A DNA stretch of 64,000 nucleotides from Ophelia neglecta (taxonomy: Eukaryota). The first letter of the stretch is position 1; each line of letters begins with the position of its first letter. Position numbers and translations under genes: made by a program. The stretch spans positions 26,846,001-26,910,000 of the forward strand of contig OZ260664.1 of NCBI GenBank assembly GCA_965285935.1, given 5' to 3'. The notes below the pieces were generated by a model. That model saw nothing but the letters and a program-made list of their open reading frames with translations. It searched no databases and was not told the DNA's origin. Of the stretch, positions 5,445 through 28,200 are shown piece by piece.

Positions 5445-7007
5445 ATGAGGCGTCCTTCGGTGATGGGAGGCAAATACAGGATGCTCCCTGGACAAGATGT
5501 TTCAAAAAGATTGTCATTTGATGGGAAATCACTTGTGTATACTTACAAGAATCTTACATCATACGCCCTTCCGCAAAGTAGTTTTATATCGGCAAACTTA
5601 CCGACCGATGTCCACTACCTCAAGCAAAACAGTCAGATAATTATTCAGCCCAGGCTAAGCGCATTTGGATCGGATTCTAAGAGGACAGCTGAACTTCACG
5701 TGTTAAATAAATATAGTCCAAGAATAACTAAAAATAATACCATCATATTACCAAAACTTGCATTAACAGATGAGTTTGAGGCAGAAGAACGTTTGAAAGA
5801 AGCCCTTGTATTAGGGGGCAACAAAGAACAAGTCAACAAAGAACCATGGTGTTCTTTTGAAGCCTACAATGGCCATACCCAGCAGAAAACCGGCTCGATG
5901 AATCCCAAACACCGCAGATTCAATAATTTTATTGCTGATAATGAACGGAAATCTGGAACCGTTGCCCAGAAGACAATTTCAAAAGTGGGATATTTGCCAC
6001 AATTTGACAATGACTCAAACTCGGCAGCTGACACAAATAAATTGGGAGAGACTAGAAAAGAGGGACAACGCTCGCTGGATGTAACACCAAGAATTACTAA
6101 AAAGATGAATTCATTATATTTCGAAGGGAATTCGTCAAGGAGCCCTTATGAGCATCAGAGTAAAGGCACACAAGGGATTTTCCTTGAATGGACAAAACAA
6201 AGGGCTGAACAAAGGCGTCTATTGGGTAACGCTCATAAACAACAAAACCCAGGCCTGCCAAGAATGCCAGGCAGGGACGGAATGCAGGAAACCCCAGAAG
6301 CGACCATATCTAGATGGCAGAGTTCCAATTTATTAGGACACCGAGAAAACGCTGGACATCATGGATTGAAACAATTTAAAGCCCGGTTAGATATGGCTAA
6401 CACAATAAAAACGATGTCACTGGATGGCACACATTTCCCTTCAGATGAAGAAGCCATTTCAAAGTCTGACAAATATAATTTTGCTAAATTCAAGCACAAT
6501 AAAAGTCAGAAGATGGTTCGGGTACCGAATTCCATTGCCGATGACGTCACTCGGAATAGTCAGATAGCCCAGTTACCTAAACAAGTTCCACATTATGAGT
6601 ATACAGTCGTTATGGATCCTAGTCAAACCGTTCGCACTAAGCCAACATCGCAACCCGACTCAGCTACTTTCGGTTATCGCGAGCCCCTCACATTTCGTTC
6701 TTTTAGAGACCAACGGAGTAAAAGCTACGAAATGTATGAAAAGGCATATGCGATGCGGGAAAAATTGGAACAAGAGGAGCGAGAAATGTTCTGCAGTATG
6801 AAGCGAAATGAAAGTGTTCCTCAATATGAAGAAGTTCATATTGATTTGAAACCAGAGAACATCGAGCCCATGTCCTACCACACTGGCAACCGGAGACCTG
6901 CAGTGAAAAATCCATGGGAACCGCACCAATGGCAGGAGCTGCCCCCAACACCTTATCTCCCCATGAATCCTCCTCCCTCGGCAGCCAGCTGTAACAGGGA
7001 GATGTAA
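5445..7007 (+). CDS. Uncharacterised 520-aa hydrophilic, likely intrinsically disordered protein (single coding exon)
   Basis: 1563-nt ORF in AT-rich DNA with an in-frame upstream stop near 5352; candidate acceptor ttttttaaag| at about 5158; S/K/N/Q/E/P-rich with a short charged helical segment (YEMYEKAYAMREKLEQEEREM) and a Pro-rich C-terminus; no recognisable domain. Confidence 0.75.
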   Translation: MRRPSVMGGKYRMLPGQDVSKRLSFDGKSLVYTYKNLTSYALPQSSFISANLPTDVHYLKQNSQIIIQPRLSAFGSDSKRTAELHVLNKYSPRITKNNTIILPKLALTDEFEAEERLKEALVLGGNKEQVNKEPWCSFEAYNGHTQQKTGSMNPKHRRFNNFIADNERKSGTVAQKTISKVGYLPQFDNDSNSAADTNKLGETRKEGQRSLDVTPRITKKMNSLYFEGNSSRSPYEHQSKGTQGIFLEWTKQRAEQRRLLGNAHKQQNPGLPRMPGRDGMQETPEATISRWQSSNLLGHRENAGHHGLKQFKARLDMANTIKTMSLDGTHFPSDEEAISKSDKYNFAKFKHNKSQKMVRVPNSIADDVTRNSQIAQLPKQVPHYEYTVVMDPSQTVRTKPTSQPDSATFGYREPLTFRSFRDQRSKSYEMYEKAYAMREKLEQEEREMFCSMKRNESVPQYEEVHIDLKPENIEPMSYHTGNRRPAVKNPWEPHQWQELPPTPYLPMNPPPSAASCNREM

Positions 7008-14318: not shown

Positions 14319-15804
14319 ATGATGATGAATTGTGGATTAGAGGACAGGGAAGCCAAGCCTCGAGTCACGTTTAAAGACTCGTTGGAGGAAAATGCTGAAG
14401 TCGGAACAAATGAAATGGACGCCTTGGACACCCTGAACAGCATGATTGACCTCAGCTTAGATGAAGGTACATACATATTTAGCTTATAGGCTACTCAATT
14501 ATGGCCGGAGCTGCCTTTCGAAATTAATGCATTTCGTCAAATAGTTTTGGATTCTATGTAGGGCTGGTCATAAAAGATTCATCAATAGTTTTAATTCTAA
14601 AGGCAACAGGCGTAATAACACCGGGTTCAACTTTGTATTTTAATTCCCTGTGGAAAGACATTATTGATATTTTTCGATATAGGATAAGTCTATGTACAAC
14701 GTTTTCATTAGTTTATCCCATACCAGCTAACGTTATTTCGAAATGCTCATTTCAGTGTCAACACCACGGCCAGCTAGCACGGAGCAAGTTCAGATAGGAT
14801 ACATTGGCCCTGGGATAAACAGTGACCAATCTGAGGATGTCATTGTTACAACATGTTCATCCGCTGCCCGCCCGTATCCTGGTGGATCTAGTAGCACCAA
14901 CTCCGGCAAGGAAATCATGGCGAGAGAAACTAGATTCGGACGTCCAACAAGTGGTCTGGCACTAGAAGACCATGGTGGAATCCAGTACGAGGGTAGTGTC
15001 AGCCTTAATGAGCCTCGCGTGTCGAATACTAATAATTATTTGGCACACTCCATATCACGCCAAATGACTTCCACGCGCTTGCGCCATCCGGCGGATATCC
15101 GTCTTATTAACGGCGTGTCTCAGCACTCCGGCGAAGAAACATGGCAGATCACATGGAAAACAGGAGTTCCTTTGATAAGTGCCTATATGGCTGGTGTAAC
15201 GTCATTTATTGCCTTTTTCCACATGCAAGATGGTCTGTTGCCGAGGTTAAAATACCCATTTATTGGAAACCTATTGGATTGGAAGCAAAATGTAACTCCT
15301 TTGGTATGGTGGGGAAATGGTGCCGTGCTGGTTTTACTTTTGTGGTGTATCGCTTATGCACGACGATTTCTGCATATAGTACTCTCTTTGGCCCTAGTTA
15401 AGCCTTACCGCCCAGTAGGTGAGAAGTCAGTGGGGCAGACAACATGTACTATCATCACATGCGTTGTCATGATAACCTACCACCTAATCATGGGGGCATG
15501 GCTTGGCTGGGCCAGTAATATATACCTCGGGTATATGATATCTGACCTTCAATATGCTGCAACCGGATTTGTACTAATGGCTGCTGCTGAAATAACTTGT
15601 GTCATAATGACTGTGCTCACCCTTAAGAGAAGAAAGCAGCGAAGTTTACGATATAAAATTACGAAAAATATTTTAGATTTTATCTCGTGGTTAGGTTTTG
15701 CTCTAGTTTCTCTTACTTTGCCAGCTTTTGTTCACTTATTGGTTAGAATAATCATTGTCTTTATTCTCTTGAAGTCGGATCAAGCGAGACCATCTTGTTG
15801 TTAG
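14319..15804 (+). CDS. Divergent TECR/steroid-5-alpha-reductase-like multi-pass membrane protein, probable pseudoenzyme, 398 aa (exons 14319-14466, 14756-15804)
   Basis: Exon 1 MMMNCGLEDREAKPRVTFKD...LSLDE ends phase 1 (GAA G|gtacat) and joins the phase-1 acceptor catttcag| at 14756 in the 14743-15804 ORF frame. The C-terminal half aligns block by block with the 17865 ORF (YPFIGNLL/WPLIGNLL; WCIAYARRF/WGIHFSRRF; GAWLGWASN/GLWNGWSLN; ISWLGFALVSLTLPAF/ITWVGFAVATMTLAAF). AATAAA at 16077. Confidence 0.8.
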
Positions 15805-17864
15805 AATTTAGGATGATTGTGTAACAACCAGTGCAAAGATTGAATTTATATACTTAACACAATTACAGTATCCATGTGGGTTTAACTATATTATAACATG
15901 ATATCAAAGATTCCATCATTTATATGATAAATGCCAACATAAGTTTGTGCTAATTTTAAGTTTCCACAAACGCATATCTGCCTCATTTTCAATCATTTTC
16001 AAGACTTGTCTTGCGAACGTAAAAATTGGCGTTTATCCAATTTTATTTTGTTTGATCTTCTAGGTTTGTGTGTTTGAATAAAGAAACAATTGGAATGCAA
16101 ATGTATATTGTTAATTACCTGTACATTGCCTAATGTACCTATATGAAAATTTATTGACCATCACTGAGATTGGGTTAATTTGATGATAAACAGGCCTGCT
16201 GTCATAAATTCCCCACAGATTATATAGGCATATTTGTTCTATACGAGACGAGCACTGGTGTACGATGTTGCCGTTGTTTAAAGGGCCCTTGAAGAGCAGA
16301 GATATCCGAGATATGCGATCGGTTGTTTGAACTTGTCGTCTGGCAGGTCGAAGGTTACACGACCTAGTCCTACCTGTACAGTACCTCCAACGTCTATACC
16401 TATACCTTAAGAGGCTATAGTTAGCATTGTAGGGGTCGACACAATAGTAGTTGGTGTGCTTAGTAATTGGAAATTGTCCAACCTCTAATGAACAATACAC
16501 GCTTCATAATGCTTGAAAGTTCTTAAACAAATGTTCAAAATCTATCAGGAGTTTCCATGCTTTATTTTGAAGTCAAATTGTTTATATGAGGTTAATTATC
16601 GGCCGATTGCGGTAAATAAATCGTCAGCACATCCACGGTATTTTGAGACGATACGTCTCTCGTAGTAAACAAGCTATACACCACCAGTGTCAACGAATGC
16701 TTTGGGGCCTTGCAATAGAACAATCTGTGAATGGCATTAAGTAGGCTGGAAACTTTACAAGCCCAGGCTTAAACCTGTATAATGCAAGTTATATCTGAAT
16801 GAAAACCTGTGAGGAGAATATGTAGGATACAACTAGAAGGAAGAAACTCCGTGGAAGATTAACCACTGATTGCAACAACTCCTGACAATATTTGGACGTA
16901 TTCGGTTTAGCCAAGGTTGTCACTTAACAAAATATGGACGGGAAACTTGAATCAAGTTTGAATGGTGTCCGATGTGAGGGGGCGTGTGTTGTTTCCAGTT
17001 TTGGACTGTACACGTTCATATGATATTATCGGTATGCGAAAATGTTTAAGGGCATATCATCGATATAACCTTAAACCTTATAAAGGGTAAGTAGCCTTTA
17101 TACTTGTGCTGTGCATATAGCTTACTGCCACACTGTGGTTATACTTAATTATTTAACAATGCCTTTTAATCAGCAAGGCTTTGGGCTACCTCTTCATTTT
17201 GCATTGCTTGATATACATACATAATTAAAATGCATCAGAATGAATCGACTTGCAAATTAATGTCATTTGTAATACTAACAGGTCAGACTTAACTCCTGCT
17301 AATGTAAGTCATCTAAAGATATGTCATGAACGGATCACTACTTTATAAGTTAATTTTAAGTAGAAGTTTCAGTTGTTTATATATTAACGAATCAATTCAG
17401 GTTCATTTTTTATGACTTCTCGTACAGATAGCAGATTAATATTCGACTTGATTTTTCACATTAGGCTAGTGTACATGTCTTTGAAGTGTTACAAATTGAT
17501 AAATGGATTACATTGGTCTTGCTAATGATTGGGCACAAAGTACATACAACAACTTGTAGGGATAGTGCATATTTGATGCCTGGATGACAGTATAATTTAG
17601 CATCCTACACTTTGTATTAACCAAAGATTTCGTCTTAAAAAAAGTTTAATATTGATCGATTCATTGAATGTTTTCAGTTGAATTTCTGATCACGATAGGT
17701 TACTTCCACTAATAATTTAATGCTCTTTTCTGTTGCAGATTTATTTATTCGTTCAGAAGAGGATACACCTCAATTGGAAAAAAATACTTTTTCCTACGTA
17801 GTAGTCATTAAACTTTTTCCTAGTAGTATCTATCAGCCCTACGTCAAAGATACGCATTACCGGA

Positions 17865-18683
17865 ATGGAGCGACAGTTTATGCGGGAGCAAGTGCGAGAG
17901 TCTCGGCGGTACCTGACTAGGAGTAGCGGCATTATACCCTACCGACCGGAAGACAATGGATGTTATCCAAGACTTTCTATCTCCTTATCCGCTTTCGGGG
18001 CCGCGTTCTTTTTTCTACTTGGAATAAACCTTGACTATATGCCTGTTGTGCCATGGCCATTAATAGGGAATCTGCTCCCTTTAGAAGAACTACTGGAAAG
18101 TGAAACTATAGTTGTCATGTTTATAGTTATGTGGGGCATTCACTTCAGCAGACGATTCGGAGAGGTTTTATTGCTGCATGATTATAGGAGGAAAATGAGT
18201 TATCTAGAAGCAATAGGTTGTAACCTATACTACTGGATATTTGGTTTGTGGAATGGATGGTCTCTGAACTTTATGCGAGATAAATGGTGGTATGCCCCAC
18301 CTCCAATTTTGTTGGTTTTAATAGGAACTTTACTTTTCGTAGTAGGTCAGATAGGTAACTGTGCTAGCCATATTAAACTTTATCAAATAAGGAAGAAAGC
18401 AAGTTTTTATGATCAAAATATTGTCAAATCCCAACATATCATTCCGAGAGGGCCCCTTTTTAAGTACATTTCCTGTCCACATTATTTATTTGAGTCTATC
18501 ACGTGGGTAGGGTTTGCTGTTGCCACCATGACATTAGCTGCGTTCGTGTTCATGCTGTGTACTATCATAACTGTGTCTGTCTACGCCTTCAGACGACACA
18601 AGGCATACCAGAAGGAATTCGATGGTCGTAATGGCAGGCAAAGGTATCCCGAAAGGAAAGCATGTATCCCTTTCATATTTTAA
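17865..18683 (+). CDS. 3-oxo-5-alpha-steroid 4-dehydrogenase family protein, trans-2,3-enoyl-CoA reductase (TECR/Tsc13/CER10)-like, 272 aa, intronless CDS
   Basis: Family motifs HFSRRFGEVLLLH, YYW, GQIGNxxxHxxL, IPRGPLFKYISCPHYLFE, RRHKAYQKEF and YPERKACIPFIF; several hydrophobic helices; in-frame stop at 17802 upstream of the ATG. Confidence 0.92.
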   Translation: MERQFMREQVRESRRYLTRSSGIIPYRPEDNGCYPRLSISLSAFGAAFFFLLGINLDYMPVVPWPLIGNLLPLEELLESETIVVMFIVMWGIHFSRRFGEVLLLHDYRRKMSYLEAIGCNLYYWIFGLWNGWSLNFMRDKWWYAPPPILLVLIGTLLFVVGQIGNCASHIKLYQIRKKASFYDQNIVKSQHIIPRGPLFKYISCPHYLFESITWVGFAVATMTLAAFVFMLCTIITVSVYAFRRHKAYQKEFDGRNGRQRYPERKACIPFIF

Positions 18684-24698: not shown

Positions 24699-25288
24699 CT
24701 ATAGTTGAGATGGCGGCGAATCAGAGTCTAATATTGGTATCTTAAAATATTTGCTGGTGGTGATTGGGTGAAAAAGAATGAGAGTTGTGATCAGGATGAA
24801 CAGAAGGCACAGCCAAAAAAAGAGTCTGTCGCAAACAGCTGCCACGTGGACCCACTCCTTGGCATAATCCGGCTTGTTATTGGTCTTATTTTTACTGTCG
24901 GAAGAGAAATTCCTCTCGAGTGGCTGTAGAGCTGGAGAACTGGCCGAGTGGCGGCGCTCGCGAGGCAGCTGCATGAGTGGGCTTCGTCTATCACGTGACC
25001 GATCCTCGTGAGATTCGTCATGTGAGGAGGAAGCGACCGGTTCGTGCATCATCACAAGTTTATACTTATGTTTGGACCTTGGCCTCTGGCCTCCTTCCGA
25101 GTCCTTCTCCCGGGCGTCTTGCGTTGGCACACAGTTACACATACAAAGTATCCGGGCAAGATAAATAACAAAGACTTTCTTGGCCCAGATTGGCACGGGT
25201 TTTTCCTTCATTCCGTACAGGTTTAGGACGAACACTGTTGCTACCATAGCCAGAGTGGTGATGGCCATCGTACAAGTCAGATAAATTC
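24699..25288 (-). CDS. Receptor last coding exon: M3, intracellular loop, M4
   Basis: Acceptor ttctttacag|GA; GIYLTCTMAITTLAMVATVFVLNLY...PVPIWAK...EWVHVAAVCDRLFFWL; TAG at 24701-24699. Confidence 0.93.
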
Positions 25289-28200
25289 CTGTAAAGAAAA
25301 CACAAACAACACTAATTATTTCTGTTTTTATCATAAAAACACTGAAGTCATGAACACTCCAAAATTGACTTTGGCATATGTATCATTAAGAGAATTATTA
25401 TGATTAAGATGCTAAACGAAAATACAAAATAAATTTGAATGAGCATTTCTGCAAGTGTTTTACCTAGTAAAGGCACATGGTCGGAGGTCCTTGGAATGGT
25501 GTCAGCGACATTAAGTAGGAAAAGTCTAAATGATAGCAGAGCTGCCACTCCAATGTGGACTTTTTGTGTGGGGGTGCAGAAAAAAATGCTTAACAGCACT
25601 GCCGAGGTCATTATTCCCGGCAATATCACATTCATTATGTAAAAGGTGTGCCGCCTCCGTAGCGCAACACTAAAGCCTATGTTGGAGAATCTCTGATTGG
25701 GACAACACTCGAAGTGGAACTCTCGGCGTTTGGTGCTCGTAGAGAGTAACTCCCACTCTCCATTCTTCTCGTAGTTATCTCTGACCGAGTAATACATGAA
25801 GTCAGTTCTGATCTTTAAACGAACGATTTAATATACTGGGTGCCATTTGAAATACGTTTGACAACTAATTTTTTATTGGATAGAAATATATTCAGACAAT
25901 GAGAGAACTCACTTATTGATAGTAGTGCTAGTAGTTGAAAGATTCATTTTGGTCGTGTAGTAGCTCCAGGCGCCGAAAATGAGCTCACACGTTTGCTCAT
26001 CGAACGGGTAGTAGGTGATATCGATGTGACACATTGTCTTAAAAACCCCGCCGGGTTCCCATCGGACCGAGCCGTCCGGGTGTAACACCGCCTGGAACTC
26101 CGTGTACTCCCCATAAATACTCTCAGCCCTAGTGACAGAAATATAAATGTTTGACTTATAGTACAAGATAATTCTAACTAAACTAACCGCGCCAGAATGT
26201 CACAAAATACAAACTACATGTAACCTTACTATAAAACAAAAAACAAAGACAGGCAAAATATGTGCCGTTCGATACAAATAAGAATTGTTTTAAGTAAATC
26301 AGGGTTACATGGCTTCTCGAATTAAGGATCTATAAGGTGAAAACACTGGGACCCGTTGAGCTTACTGCGGAAATTCTTACTTTGTACAAGTGTAAGGGGT
26401 ACTTGATCATGTAATGCATTTTCTTTCGTGAGTAATTACAAGAAATATGCCTTTGATGTGTTAGCAGTGTCCTGTATTACAAGGCCAATTTGTCTTTAAT
26501 TATTTCAATGAGCCATACGCTACACAGTGGAGATAGTGATGACCGTACAGGGAGGTATGTCATGGACATAGGAGAATTTCAAGGTAAATTCATTCCTCTG
26601 ATATGTCTGTAGCAGCACAATATTGCGGAACAGAAGATAATGGCAACTTGTTATTAGTAATCATGGGCAATAACAATATTAACTATCACACTGCTATACG
26701 TCGTATATAGCACCATAGAAAATTGACACGATGACCATTCAGATCAAAAGACCCATTCCTGGCATCTAAACAAACTGTACGGTCATCGCCCCATTTGTAG
26801 TATTCCGCGATATGACCTTGAAAAGAGGTTTTGCTTTATTTAAACAGAAACATTCAATAAGGGACATCATTATCCAAGGTTTCTTACAGAATAGAAACTG
26901 ATTTGATAACTGGAAATGACCTACCAGATGTGTACATTGTCTATAAAACTTATCTGCGGTTATATCGAATGGGCATTTAATTTACCCGTTAATGACAGCG
27001 AATTCCGGCCTCCATATTTTTTTTCCGTCGACGACGATTGTGTCCAGGCTGCTGATTTCTCTGTCCCAGGTAAGACGTTCGTCCTTCCATTCCTAAAGAA
27101 AGTGATAATAAAGGAACATATCTACAGTCTGTCGTATCAATAGATCAATATATTTATATCGAAATAGCTTAACGTTATTGGGATATACAGAGATCATGAC
27201 TTAAAGGCGTATAGGAGTATTGGCGTGAGTATCTAATTGTGGGCAGTGGGAGGTATGACCCACTGTAATAACGGCCATCTATTCGACATTTGGAAGCAAA
27301 ACAATCACGTCACTTGGCTCTTCAATTTCACAATGTGAATAAAATCATACATTCGAATATAAAATTACCCTACACTTAAACCTTAAGCCATTGTAGAATT
27401 TAAAAGTAAACCAATGTCACTCCCTTTTACCTAGCGGTGTTGCATAGCATATATGATAGGCCTACTTTGGCTGAGCGATATGCAACAGAAAGAAAATCAC
27501 AAAAACGGAATTCACGTGGATGACTACTTTTACTCGGACAGCATTATAGAGCAACTTATGGATGTGACGGTACTCCTTAAAAGCATTATTTATAGACCTA
27601 TTGCCCATGAAGCTGCACATATTCTTGGCAGACAGTGAAAGCCTTAATAAATGAATTTAATTTTGAAATCTTTTTTCTGCTCTTATTCCAATAACTTGAT
27701 TTGTGAAAATAAACTTCCCCAGATAAAATGTTATCATCATTCGCGTTGAAGTAAAAAATCGTGCTTCAACCCCTCTGGCATTTCTTAGCTATCTAGAGAC
27801 TAATGTGGCGTGCTAACCAGCACAACTCACCAGACGCGGAGTTTCGGGAACACTAAGGAGCCTCGTCTCTCAGAGTAGCCCACCTCATTCCTGACGCGGC
27901 TTGGGTACAGGCTTAGATATAAATTATTTTGATAGCAGGCCTATAGATGAGTCGGGCAAAAAGTACGTGCATGAAATGTGTCTTGGCTGTCAACCTTCCG
28001 ATGAGCTCACAGGGGTCTTTTTCGAGTAGCAAGGTTACCAGTTATCACTTATTACAATGTTTCATTGACTATCAAAACGGGACCATATCCTGATTTCACC
28101 ATTGCAGGTTTCTGGCAAGGTTTCCGACAATGTTCGTCATAACAAGATAAGAAGTTGTCACAACAACTTGCAAAACCATAAACTACCACCACCTCACCAA

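What the first reader, a model, noticed from the sequence alone, without database searches (positions are those of the whole stretch)
14319..18683. Tandem enzyme plus pseudoenzyme pair of the TECR/5-alpha-reductase fold
Seen: the 398-aa protein aligns helix by helix with the 272-aa reductase 2 kb downstream but has lost essentially every family hallmark. HFxRRxxE becomes AYARRFLH, GN..H..L becomes TC..T..T, the IPxG...SCPHYxxE loop is deleted or replaced (YKITKNILDF), and the C-terminal H..Y...F..YP..RK..IPF tail is absent. The ORF nevertheless stays open for 1.2 kb and has gained a ~180-aa disordered N-terminus. Established: these motifs form the NADPH-binding and catalytic site in TECR/SRD5A enzymes. 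Inference: a maintained, catalytically dead paralogue repurposed as a lipid/steroid-binding scaffold, sensor or regulatory partner of its neighbour.
Basis: partly seen in the sequence, partly recalled or inferred. Interest (0 to 1): 0.8.

Follow-up and report, generated by a model that had tools for sequence, protein, structure and literature searches.

The report
Conserved dead-reductase paralogue beside TECR-like gene
Next to an ordinary-looking membrane reductase gene lies a very divergent copy that keeps the membrane fold but has lost the parts that hold the cofactor NADPH. It belongs to an old, unnamed, selectively maintained family whose named members are all annelid worms, so it is a real pseudoenzyme of unknown role, not a decaying duplicate.

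Summary
ORF B (17865-18683, 272 aa) is a clear Steroid_dh/PF02544 reductase. ORF A (14743-15804, 353 aa uninterrupted) has no Pfam hit but is a true homologue: profile-profile probability 99.9%, E 7e-35. Its AlphaFold model best matches a steroid 5-alpha-reductase (Z 13.0).

A lacks the HF..E, GN..H and IPxG..SCPHY..E motifs and the whole C-terminal tail. Its first ~130 residues are disordered.

New here: A is not a private duplicate. An exhaustive search found 14 A-like proteins; those with a source name are annelid hypothetical proteins. They form one clade (100/100) that lost the same motifs. The family is under purifying selection (omega about 0.13-0.21, against 0.17 for B-like genes; omega=1 is rejected).

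The A-B tandem is kept in two other species but is absent within 10 kb at five other A-family loci. Constraint has moved away from the cytosolic NADPH loops to the membrane core and luminal loops, with new invariant residues.

Expression could not be tested because no RNA runs exist. The A-B binding prediction gave no answer. This scan had not noted the pair before.

Verdict: a real, conserved pseudo-reductase family; its mechanism is inferred only.

The parts
14743..15804 (+). Gene A: uninterrupted ORF of 353 aa plus stop. It is a divergent, motif-less member of the SRD5A/TECR fold.
   Evidence: ORF. No Pfam hit. Unique in the genome. Homology to the B family by hhalign 99.9%. Fold match to 7c83, Z 13.0.
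14743..15129 (+). A residues 1-129: disordered, poorly conserved N-terminal region. It is inferred to be cytosolic.
   Evidence: pLDDT below 50. Mean column conservation is 0.18. Codon-position identity to L013 is 45/52/28%.
15130..15774 (+). A residues 130-344: six-helix membrane domain homologous to TM1-TM6 of B.
   Evidence: Helices 130-159, 193-218, 232-257, 269-295, 302-323 and 326-344, with pLDDT 80-95. Alignments.
15790..15801 (+). C-terminal PSCC. A cysteine-rich end is conserved in the A1 subclade (PMCC, PHCC, SCCC, SCLC, SCMC). It is a candidate S-acylation site (inference).
   Evidence: Alignment A1; ORF in L013.
14319..14466 (+). Unsupported.
   Evidence: ATG and frame. Donor GT at 14467 and acceptor AG at 14754-14755. 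No similar peptide in L013, L015, L017 or L019. No RNA data.
16077..16082 (+). AATAAA 273 nt after A's stop codon. It is a possible polyadenylation signal and would mean a separate transcript from B. Weak evidence.
17865..18683 (+). Gene B: 272-aa single-exon Steroid_dh family reductase with complete NADPH motifs and no ubiquitin-like domain.
   Evidence: PF02544 at 2e-26. PDB sequence matches: CeTECR 2.4e-18, PbSRD5A 9e-14. Model pLDDT 83, TM-score 0.69 to 7c83.
18141..18164 (+). B residues 93-100, HFSRRFGE (cytosolic end of TM2). R97 aligns with the NADPH ligand R141 of C. elegans TECR.
   Evidence: alignment, table, PMC13464631.
18345..18371 (+). B residues 161-169, GQIGNCASH (TM4). In A this is AEITCVIMT.
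18444..18494 (+). B residues 194-210, PRGPLFKYISCPHYLFE. Y207 and E210 align with the NADPH ligands Y248 and E251 of CeTECR. This stretch is deleted or replaced in A, except that E210 corresponds to D312.
18591..18680 (+). B residues 243-272, C-terminal tail RRHKAYQKEF..YPERKACIPFIF. It aligns with CeTECR K285 and Y289. A has no counterpart.

Best explanation
Gene A encodes a non-catalytic ('pseudo-reductase') member of the SRD5A/TECR membrane reductase superfamily.

Shown:
- It descends from a B-like TECR-type reductase by an old duplication. The duplication was probably tandem, since A and B are still adjacent in three species.
- It keeps the six-helix bundle.
- It has lost three of the four sequence blocks that hold NADPH in solved relatives.
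- It has been under purifying selection since, as one clade whose named members are annelids.

Inferred:
- It can no longer bind NADPH in the canonical way, so it does not reduce a double bond.
- It sits in the ER membrane with both ends in the cytosol, as TECR does.
- It uses the retained intramembrane polar pocket (R207, R208, H247, N259, E283, D312, R335) and its conserved luminal loops (N176-L177-x-D179, W190, Y264, S267-D268) to hold a lipid-like ligand or a partner protein.
- The disordered cytosolic N-terminus and the cysteine-rich C-terminus provide regulation and membrane anchoring.

My preferred mechanism is a non-catalytic subunit or regulator of the B-type reductase or of a related ER lipid-modifying complex. 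The paradigm is a dead paralogue that partners or tunes its active relative. I put about 0.85 on 'conserved, canonically inactive paralogue' and about 0.35-0.4 on the partner/regulator mechanism.
For: - Homology: hhalign 99.9%, E 7e-35; BLASTP E 4e-8.
- Fold: the best PDB match of A's model is PbSRD5A at Z 13.0 (rmsd 3.3 over 168 aa). The next matches are the sterol reductase 4quv and ICMT, which share the fold. B's model hits the same entries.
- Lost motifs are family-wide. NADPH ligands are as defined for CeTECR in PMC13464631. The equivalents of Y248, K285 and Y289, the GN..H block and the whole cytosolic loop are gone. The catalytic Y168 equivalent is His in 12 of 14 members.
- The family is old and monophyletic: 14 A-like proteins among 22 hits, clade support 100/100. 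The named members are from Capitella and Paralvinella.
- Selection: omega is 0.13 for the family and 0.21 for the A1 subclade, against 0.17 for B-like genes. Omega=1 is worse by more than 260 lnL. Codon-position identity is 53/68/36%. There is no intergenic DNA similarity to the syntenic contig.
- Synteny: A-B adjacency in the window, L013 and L015.
- Redistribution of constraint: cytosolic loops and the tail score 0.03-0.28 in the A family against 0.43-0.59 in B. Luminal loops and TM3 stay at 0.5-0.6.
Against: - No evidence of transcription: no RNA run holds the stretch, and the laid runs are genomic contigs.
- No evidence of A-B contact: complex prediction gave no answer.
- Five of eight A-family loci have no B-like gene within 10 kb. 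An obligate pairing with the neighbour is therefore not indicated.
- Some cofactor-contacting positions persist (R207/R208, D312/E). A conserved His and Arg appear in the pocket, which leaves room for altered chemistry.
- omega estimates rest on saturated synonymous sites and are imprecise.
Confidence: 0.5

Rival explanations
1. A has a function of its own, unrelated to B or to reduction. The old scaffold would be re-used as a luminal- or extracellular-facing binding protein, receptor or small-solute/ion handler, working through the newly fixed acidic luminal motifs (D179, S267-D268), W190 and the buried H247/R335.
For: A-family-specific invariant residues lie in the luminal loops and the bundle core. 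The cytosolic elements are unconstrained. Most A-family loci are not next to a B-like gene. The stem branch to the A clade is long, 1.53.
Against: No similarity to any transporter or receptor family: Pfam gave nothing and the atlas searches gave nothing. The topology is inferred by homology only. Adjacency with B is retained on both branches of the A1 subclade.
Confidence: 0.27
2. A is still an enzyme. It would bind a nucleotide cofactor or another substrate in a non-canonical way and catalyse a different reaction, using the conserved R207/R208, H247, E283, D/E312 and R335.
For: Several pocket residues are invariant across the family. The superfamily (SRD5A, sterol reductases, ICMT, PEMT) already spans different chemistries on one fold. 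omega is as low as for B.
Against: Three of four NADPH-binding segments, including the whole C-terminal tail and the loop before TM5, are deleted. No replacement segment is conserved on the cytosolic side (conservation 0.03-0.28). There is no match to methyltransferase families.
Confidence: 0.13
3. A is a decaying duplicate (unitary pseudogene in the making) whose ORF is open by chance, or the A/B similarity is a chance resemblance of hydrophobic helices.
For: No expression data. No Pfam hit. dN is twice that of B against the same species: 0.52 versus 0.26.
Against: Intact single-exon orthologues exist at 10 loci with saturated synonymous divergence. omega is 0.13-0.21, and omega=1 is rejected by more than 260 lnL. 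There are 13 invariant columns over 14 sequences. The profile-profile E-value is 7e-35. No polymorphism was seen in A in three DNA runs.
Confidence: 0.03

Closest known systems
TECR / Tsc13 / C. elegans ART-1 (very-long-chain trans-2-enoyl-CoA reductase; PDB 22of, paper PMC13464631)
   Same: B shares the six-helix core, the HY/F-x-(K/R)-R-x-x-E motif, GN..H, SCP(H/N)Y..E and the C-terminal K/R-H..Y..F..YP..RK..IPF tail. A shares the helix bundle, the RR/RK pair and the acidic residue equivalent to E251.
   Different: Neither A nor B has the N-terminal ubiquitin-like domain. B carries a family-specific luminal PxPLxGNLLP motif. A lacks the equivalents of Y248, K285 and Y289, the GN..H block and the tail, and has His in place of catalytic Y168.
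Steroid 5-alpha-reductases SRD5A1/2 and bacterial PbSRD5A (PDB 7bw1, 7c83)
   Same: Best structural matches for both models: A Z 13.0, B TM-score 0.69-0.70. The B-family profile matches PbSRD5A at E 3e-43.
   Different: SRD5A enzymes have seven helices; A and B align from TM2 onward. In the profile-to-PbSRD5A alignment, no Glu is conserved in the B family at the place aligned to the ELP Glu of PbSRD5A, taken from memory as the counterpart of SRD5A2 E57. The position is also not conserved in A. A has no Steroid_dh HMM match.
TECRL (vertebrate TECR-like protein of unknown activity; PMC5167130 listed, not read)
   Same: A lineage-restricted extra paralogue of TECR with unclear biochemical role.
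   Different: From memory, TECRL keeps the Steroid_dh domain and its motifs; I did not check this here. A has lost them and is not detected by the Pfam model. The two are unrelated in origin: vertebrate versus annelid clades.
Pseudoenzyme partners in membrane lipid pathways, for example NgBR/Nus1 with DHDDS, or iRhoms and Derlins among rhomboids (recalled from general knowledge, not tested here)
   Same: A dead paralogue of a membrane enzyme, conserved under selection, that has lost catalytic or cofactor residues but keeps the fold.
   Different: No interaction or regulatory role has been shown for A. I found no report of a pseudoenzyme clade in the SRD5A/TECR superfamily (search found none).

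Membership tests
Pfam PF02544 Steroid_dh (SRD5A/TECR reductases): gene B | Match to the family HMM above the gathering score | tested here: met
   93.2 bits against a cut-off of 22.6, E 2e-26
Pfam PF02544 Steroid_dh (SRD5A/TECR reductases): gene A | Match to the family HMM above the gathering score | tested here: not met
   No hit at E<=1. Only 2 of 14 A-family members give marginal hits, best 0.0084. Homology shows only at profile-profile level.
SRD5A/TECR reductases: gene A | Multi-helix ICMT-like reductase fold | tested here: met
   AF2 model against PbSRD5A 7c83: Z 13.0, rmsd 3.3, 168 aa. 4quv gives Z 9.2 and ICMT gives Z 7.3-7.7. Unrelated chains score 6.5 or below.
SRD5A/TECR reductases: gene A | NADPH-coordinating residues (CeTECR R141, R150, R219, Y248, E251, K285, Y289; the GN..H/D block of TM4) | tested here: not met
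   Kept: R208 (aligns with R141) and D312 (aligns with E251). Lost: Y248 becomes N309, K285 and Y289 have no counterpart, GN..H becomes TC..T, and the loop before TM5 is deleted.
SRD5A/TECR reductases: gene A | Catalytic Glu/Tyr pair (CeTECR E95, Y96, Y168) | tested here: inconclusive
   The Y168 equivalent is H247, His in 12 of 14 A-family members. The Glu position cannot be aligned with confidence and is not conserved even in the B family.
SRD5A/TECR reductases: genes A and B | NADPH-dependent reduction of a lipid C=C bond | not testable with these tools
   Needs an enzyme assay or complementation.
TECR proper (Tsc13/ART-1 orthologue): gene B | N-terminal ubiquitin-like domain followed by the six-helix reductase domain | tested here: not met
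   B is 272 aa. Residues 1-28 are disordered and TM1 starts at residue 35. Five other multi-exon PF02544 loci in the genome are candidates for the canonical enzymes.
Pseudoenzyme: gene A | Homologue of an enzyme family, key catalytic/cofactor residues lost, sequence kept under purifying selection | tested here: met
Pseudoenzyme: gene A | Expressed protein that lacks the ancestral activity | not testable with these tools
   No RNA runs for this organism. Activity needs a bench assay.

The most novel reading that the evidence does not exclude
The A family is a previously unrecognised, annelid-centred clade in which the TECR/SRD5A reductase scaffold has been turned into a non-enzymatic membrane protein. 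Its working surface would have moved from the cytosolic NADPH site to the luminal face and the bundle core (new invariant D179, W190, H247, S267-D268, R335). That would make it a lipid or ion sensor/receptor, not a mere inert partner of the neighbouring enzyme.
Probability: 0.25. Interest if true: 0.65.

Novelty: new variant of a known kind. Interest (0 to 1): 0.5.

Why it matters
The SRD5A/TECR superfamily is medically and metabolically important: steroid activation, very-long-chain fatty acid and sphingolipid synthesis, and dolichol synthesis. As far as my literature search shows, no pseudoenzyme branch has been described in it.

A conserved clade has shed the NADPH site but kept the membrane core. 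This gives a natural experiment on which parts of the fold serve lipid or partner binding and which serve catalysis. It may also point to an unknown regulatory layer of lipid metabolism in annelids.

The family is currently annotated only as 'hypothetical protein' and is invisible to Pfam. Defining it would improve annotation of lophotrochozoan genomes. Its narrow known range and the lack of any functional or expression data limit its immediate impact.

Tried and rejected
- Word-based protein search with A alone found nothing. With the A-family alignment it returned only one known member, because the candidate list was swamped. Neither says anything about family size. The exhaustive search is the basis for that.
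- RNA evidence: no RNA run holds the stretch. The three runs laid are genomic contigs of one sample, probably the source of the assembly, and show no joints. Neither expression nor the proposed intron could be tested.
- Logan contigs that carry A-family genes (L025, L027) are colinear with genomic DNA or end in adapter sequence. They give no evidence of transcription.
- Complex prediction with B 29-272 and A 126-353: no answer (score 0.00, controls not run). It is neither support nor evidence against binding.
- ESM Atlas feature search and shape search returned only unrelated low-score clusters.
- Pairwise dN/dS (NG86, LWL85, YN00) failed because dS is saturated. I replaced it with codon-position identities and an ML codon model.
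- Looking up accession numbers in the paper library to name the source organisms found nothing.
- The decaying-pseudogene and chance-similarity readings were considered and rejected (see rivals).
Full report
**What is there**

The window is part of a 762-Mb animal genome, contig C7. It has few long ORFs and a Cys-loop receptor exon nearby.

- ORF A lies at 14743-15804 (353 aa) on the + strand.
- ORF B lies at 17865-18683 (272 aa) on the + strand, 2.06 kb further on.
- B matches Pfam Steroid_dh (PF02544) at E 2e-26. A matches nothing in Pfam even at E<=1.
- A is unique in the genome.
- Five further PF02544 loci exist and are split into exons. B is therefore an extra, intronless paralogue and not the only reductase of this family.

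**The gene model**

The join uses a GT..AG intron at 14467-14755.

The splice sites are plausible, but three things count against the model:
- The exon peptide has no counterpart upstream of the orthologue in the syntenic contig or in three other related loci.
- A-like genes elsewhere are single exons of 292-354 aa.
- No RNA data exist.

I searched the exon and the main ORF separately. The supported model is the 353-aa ORF.

**Is A really related to B?**

Yes.
- Pairwise BLASTP gives 25% identity, E 4e-8.
- An exhaustive HMMER search of 1.84 billion representatives with A found 22 proteins. They comprise 14 A-like and 8 B-like sequences.
- Profile-profile comparison of the two alignments gives probability 99.9%, E 7e-35. 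It covers A 137-344 and B 32-242, which is every membrane helix.
- The AlphaFold model of A has pLDDT 80-95 in six helices and below 50 for residues 1-131.
- That model's best match among 48,161 PDB representatives is the bacterial steroid 5-alpha-reductase 7c83: Z 13.0, rmsd 3.3 over 168 residues.
- The next matches are a sterol reductase (Z 9.2) and ICMT (Z 7.3-7.7), which share the fold. Unrelated chains score 6.5 or less.
- B's model (pLDDT 83) hits 7c83 and 7bw1 with TM-scores 0.69-0.70.

**The lost motifs**

NADPH ligands and catalytic residues are defined for C. elegans TECR in PMC13464631: R141, R150, R219, Y248, E251, K285, Y289, and E95, Y96, Y168. I mapped them through the B-CeTECR alignment and a joint alignment of both families.

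B keeps the following:

| Feature in B | CeTECR equivalent |
|---|---|
| H93 | none named |
| R97 | R141 |
| E100 | none named |
| Y123 | Y168 |
| G164-N165..H169 | none named |
| loop 194-204 | none named |
| P205-H206-Y207..E210 | Y248 and E251 |
| tail 243-272 | K285 and Y289 |

A differs at these places:

| Position in B | Residue(s) in A |
|---|---|
| H93 | A204 |
| E100 | H211 |
| GN..H | T285-C286..T290 |
| loop 194-204 | none (deleted) |
| P205-H206-Y207 | T-K-N |
| tail 243-272 | none |

These losses hold for the whole A family. Only the closest orthologue still has GN.

What survives in A:
- R207 is invariant and position 208 is R or K.
- E283 is invariant.
- An acidic residue sits at 312 in 13 of 14 members.
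- The TM3 motif GxWxGWxxN is kept.

What is new and conserved in the A family:
- H247, in place of the catalytic Tyr, in 12 of 14 members.
- R335 in TM6, invariant.
- D179, W190 and S267-D268 in the two loops that are luminal by homology with TECR topology.

Per-segment conservation shows where constraint sits in each family:

| Segment | A family | B family |
|---|---|---|
| Cytosolic loops and tail (NADPH-binding in B) | 0.03-0.28 | 0.43-0.59 |
| Luminal loops and TM3 | 0.5-0.6 | about 0.5-0.6 |

**An old family under selection**

- Named members are hypothetical proteins of the annelids Paralvinella palmiformis and Capitella teleta.
- A named B-like protein comes from the annelid Lamellibrachia satsuma.
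- I infer that the window's organism is an annelid. I could not name it.
- In a maximum-likelihood tree the A family is one clade (100/100) on a long stem (1.53). It has two subclades with different C-terminal ends: a cysteine-rich '-CC' type that includes the window, and a '-S-x-V-F / -A-F' type.
- Synonymous sites are saturated and pairwise dS is undefined. Intergenic DNA shows no similarity to the syntenic contig.
- Even so, A keeps 44% identity in its membrane domain with its orthologue. Codon-position identities are 53/68/36%.
- A Goldman-Yang codon model gives omega 0.13 for ten A-family genes and 0.21 for the five A1 genes, against 0.17 for six B-like genes. Fixing omega at 1 costs more than 260 log-likelihood units.
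- These values are imprecise because of saturation, but they exclude neutral decay.
- Three genomic runs of one sample show no variant inside A and one synonymous variant in B.

**Linkage**

- The A-B pair is kept in the same order and orientation in contig L013. There B' is 60% identical, A' is 39% identical overall, and the same receptor gene lies downstream.
- It is kept as a convergent pair in L015.
- These two cases sit on both branches of the A1 subclade, so the adjacency is probably ancestral. That fits an origin by tandem duplication.
- No B-like gene lies within 10 kb of the A-like gene in Paralvinella, Capitella or three A2-subclade loci.

**How it most likely works**

Shown: fold kept, canonical cofactor site dismantled, purifying selection, constraint moved to the core and luminal loops.

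Inferred:
- No canonical NADPH binding and hence no reduction.
- ER membrane location with both ends cytosolic, by homology with TECR.
- The disordered N-terminus and the cysteine tail act as a cytosolic regulatory region and an acylation element.

I favour a non-catalytic subunit or regulator of the B-type reductase or a related ER lipid complex, at about 0.35-0.4.

The main rival, at about 0.27, is an independent binding or sensing function on the luminal face. It is favoured by the new luminal invariants and by the frequent absence of a B neighbour.

Residual or altered enzymatic activity (about 0.13) cannot be excluded, because several pocket residues are invariant.

The only direct test of A-B contact available here gave no answer. 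Expression is untested.

**Comparison with what is known**

- B is a divergent TECR/SRD5A-type reductase without the ubiquitin-like domain. As a single sequence it is closest to CeTECR (2.4e-18). As a family profile it is closest to PbSRD5A (3e-43).
- No Glu is conserved in the B family at the place aligned to the ELP Glu of PbSRD5A. From memory, that Glu is the counterpart of SRD5A2 E57. B's substrate is therefore open.
- A fails the Pfam membership test and the cofactor-residue test. It should not be filed as a reductase. It is a homologue that works, at most, like a pseudoenzyme.
- A literature search for TECR together with pseudoenzyme found nothing.
- The earlier notes of this scan on this genome do not mention the pair.

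**Verdict**

The new point is that A represents a conserved, unannotated, motif-less clade of the superfamily, not a local dead copy. Interest is moderate (0.5). It is a clean new variant of a known kind, but it has no expression or functional evidence and a narrow known taxonomic range.

Noticed in passing
window 5445-7007 (+): A 520-aa open reading frame with no Pfam family, polar and low in complexity. It is one of only four ORFs of 200 aa or more in the 64-kb window.
   Followed up: partly
window 24699-25334 (-) and L013:17375-18067 (-): A Neur_chan_memb exon (PF02932, 1.4e-18) lies downstream of B. The same kind of gene sits in the same relative place in the related contig, which confirms synteny.
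   Followed up: partly
L015:4920-7043 (-): In this related species the B-like reductase lies in one 720-codon open frame. It is preceded by about 450 residues of P/Q/R/G-rich, probably disordered sequence. It ends in ...IPRIC instead of ...IPFIF.
   Followed up: partly
L024:10001-10837 (+) and 15103-16089 (-): Two complete B-like genes with all NADPH motifs lie in convergent orientation 4 kb apart, in a genome near Lamellibrachia. The second has a ~110-aa N-terminal extension and an 'NVLDW' loop reminiscent of the A family. This suggests repeated local duplication of B-like genes.
   Followed up: partly
L013:6346-7497 (protein P0006): The database protein for the A orthologue (383 aa) is a metagenome gene call that reads through stop codons; it ends ...CCWV. 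The real ORF is L013:6502-7491 and ends ...PMCC.
   Followed up: yes
window 18036-18059 (B residues 58-65) and the B-family alignment A2: The B family keeps all NADPH motifs. It has no conserved Glu at the place aligned to the ELP Glu of PbSRD5A, which from memory is the counterpart of SRD5A2 E57. Its substrate and catalytic acid may therefore differ from those of TECR and SRD5A.
   Followed up: partly
window 16509, 16619, 17258, 17407, 17484, 18101: Single-base differences appear in genomic contigs of the same sample. Five are intergenic and one (18101 T>C) is synonymous in B codon 79. None falls in A.
   Followed up: yes
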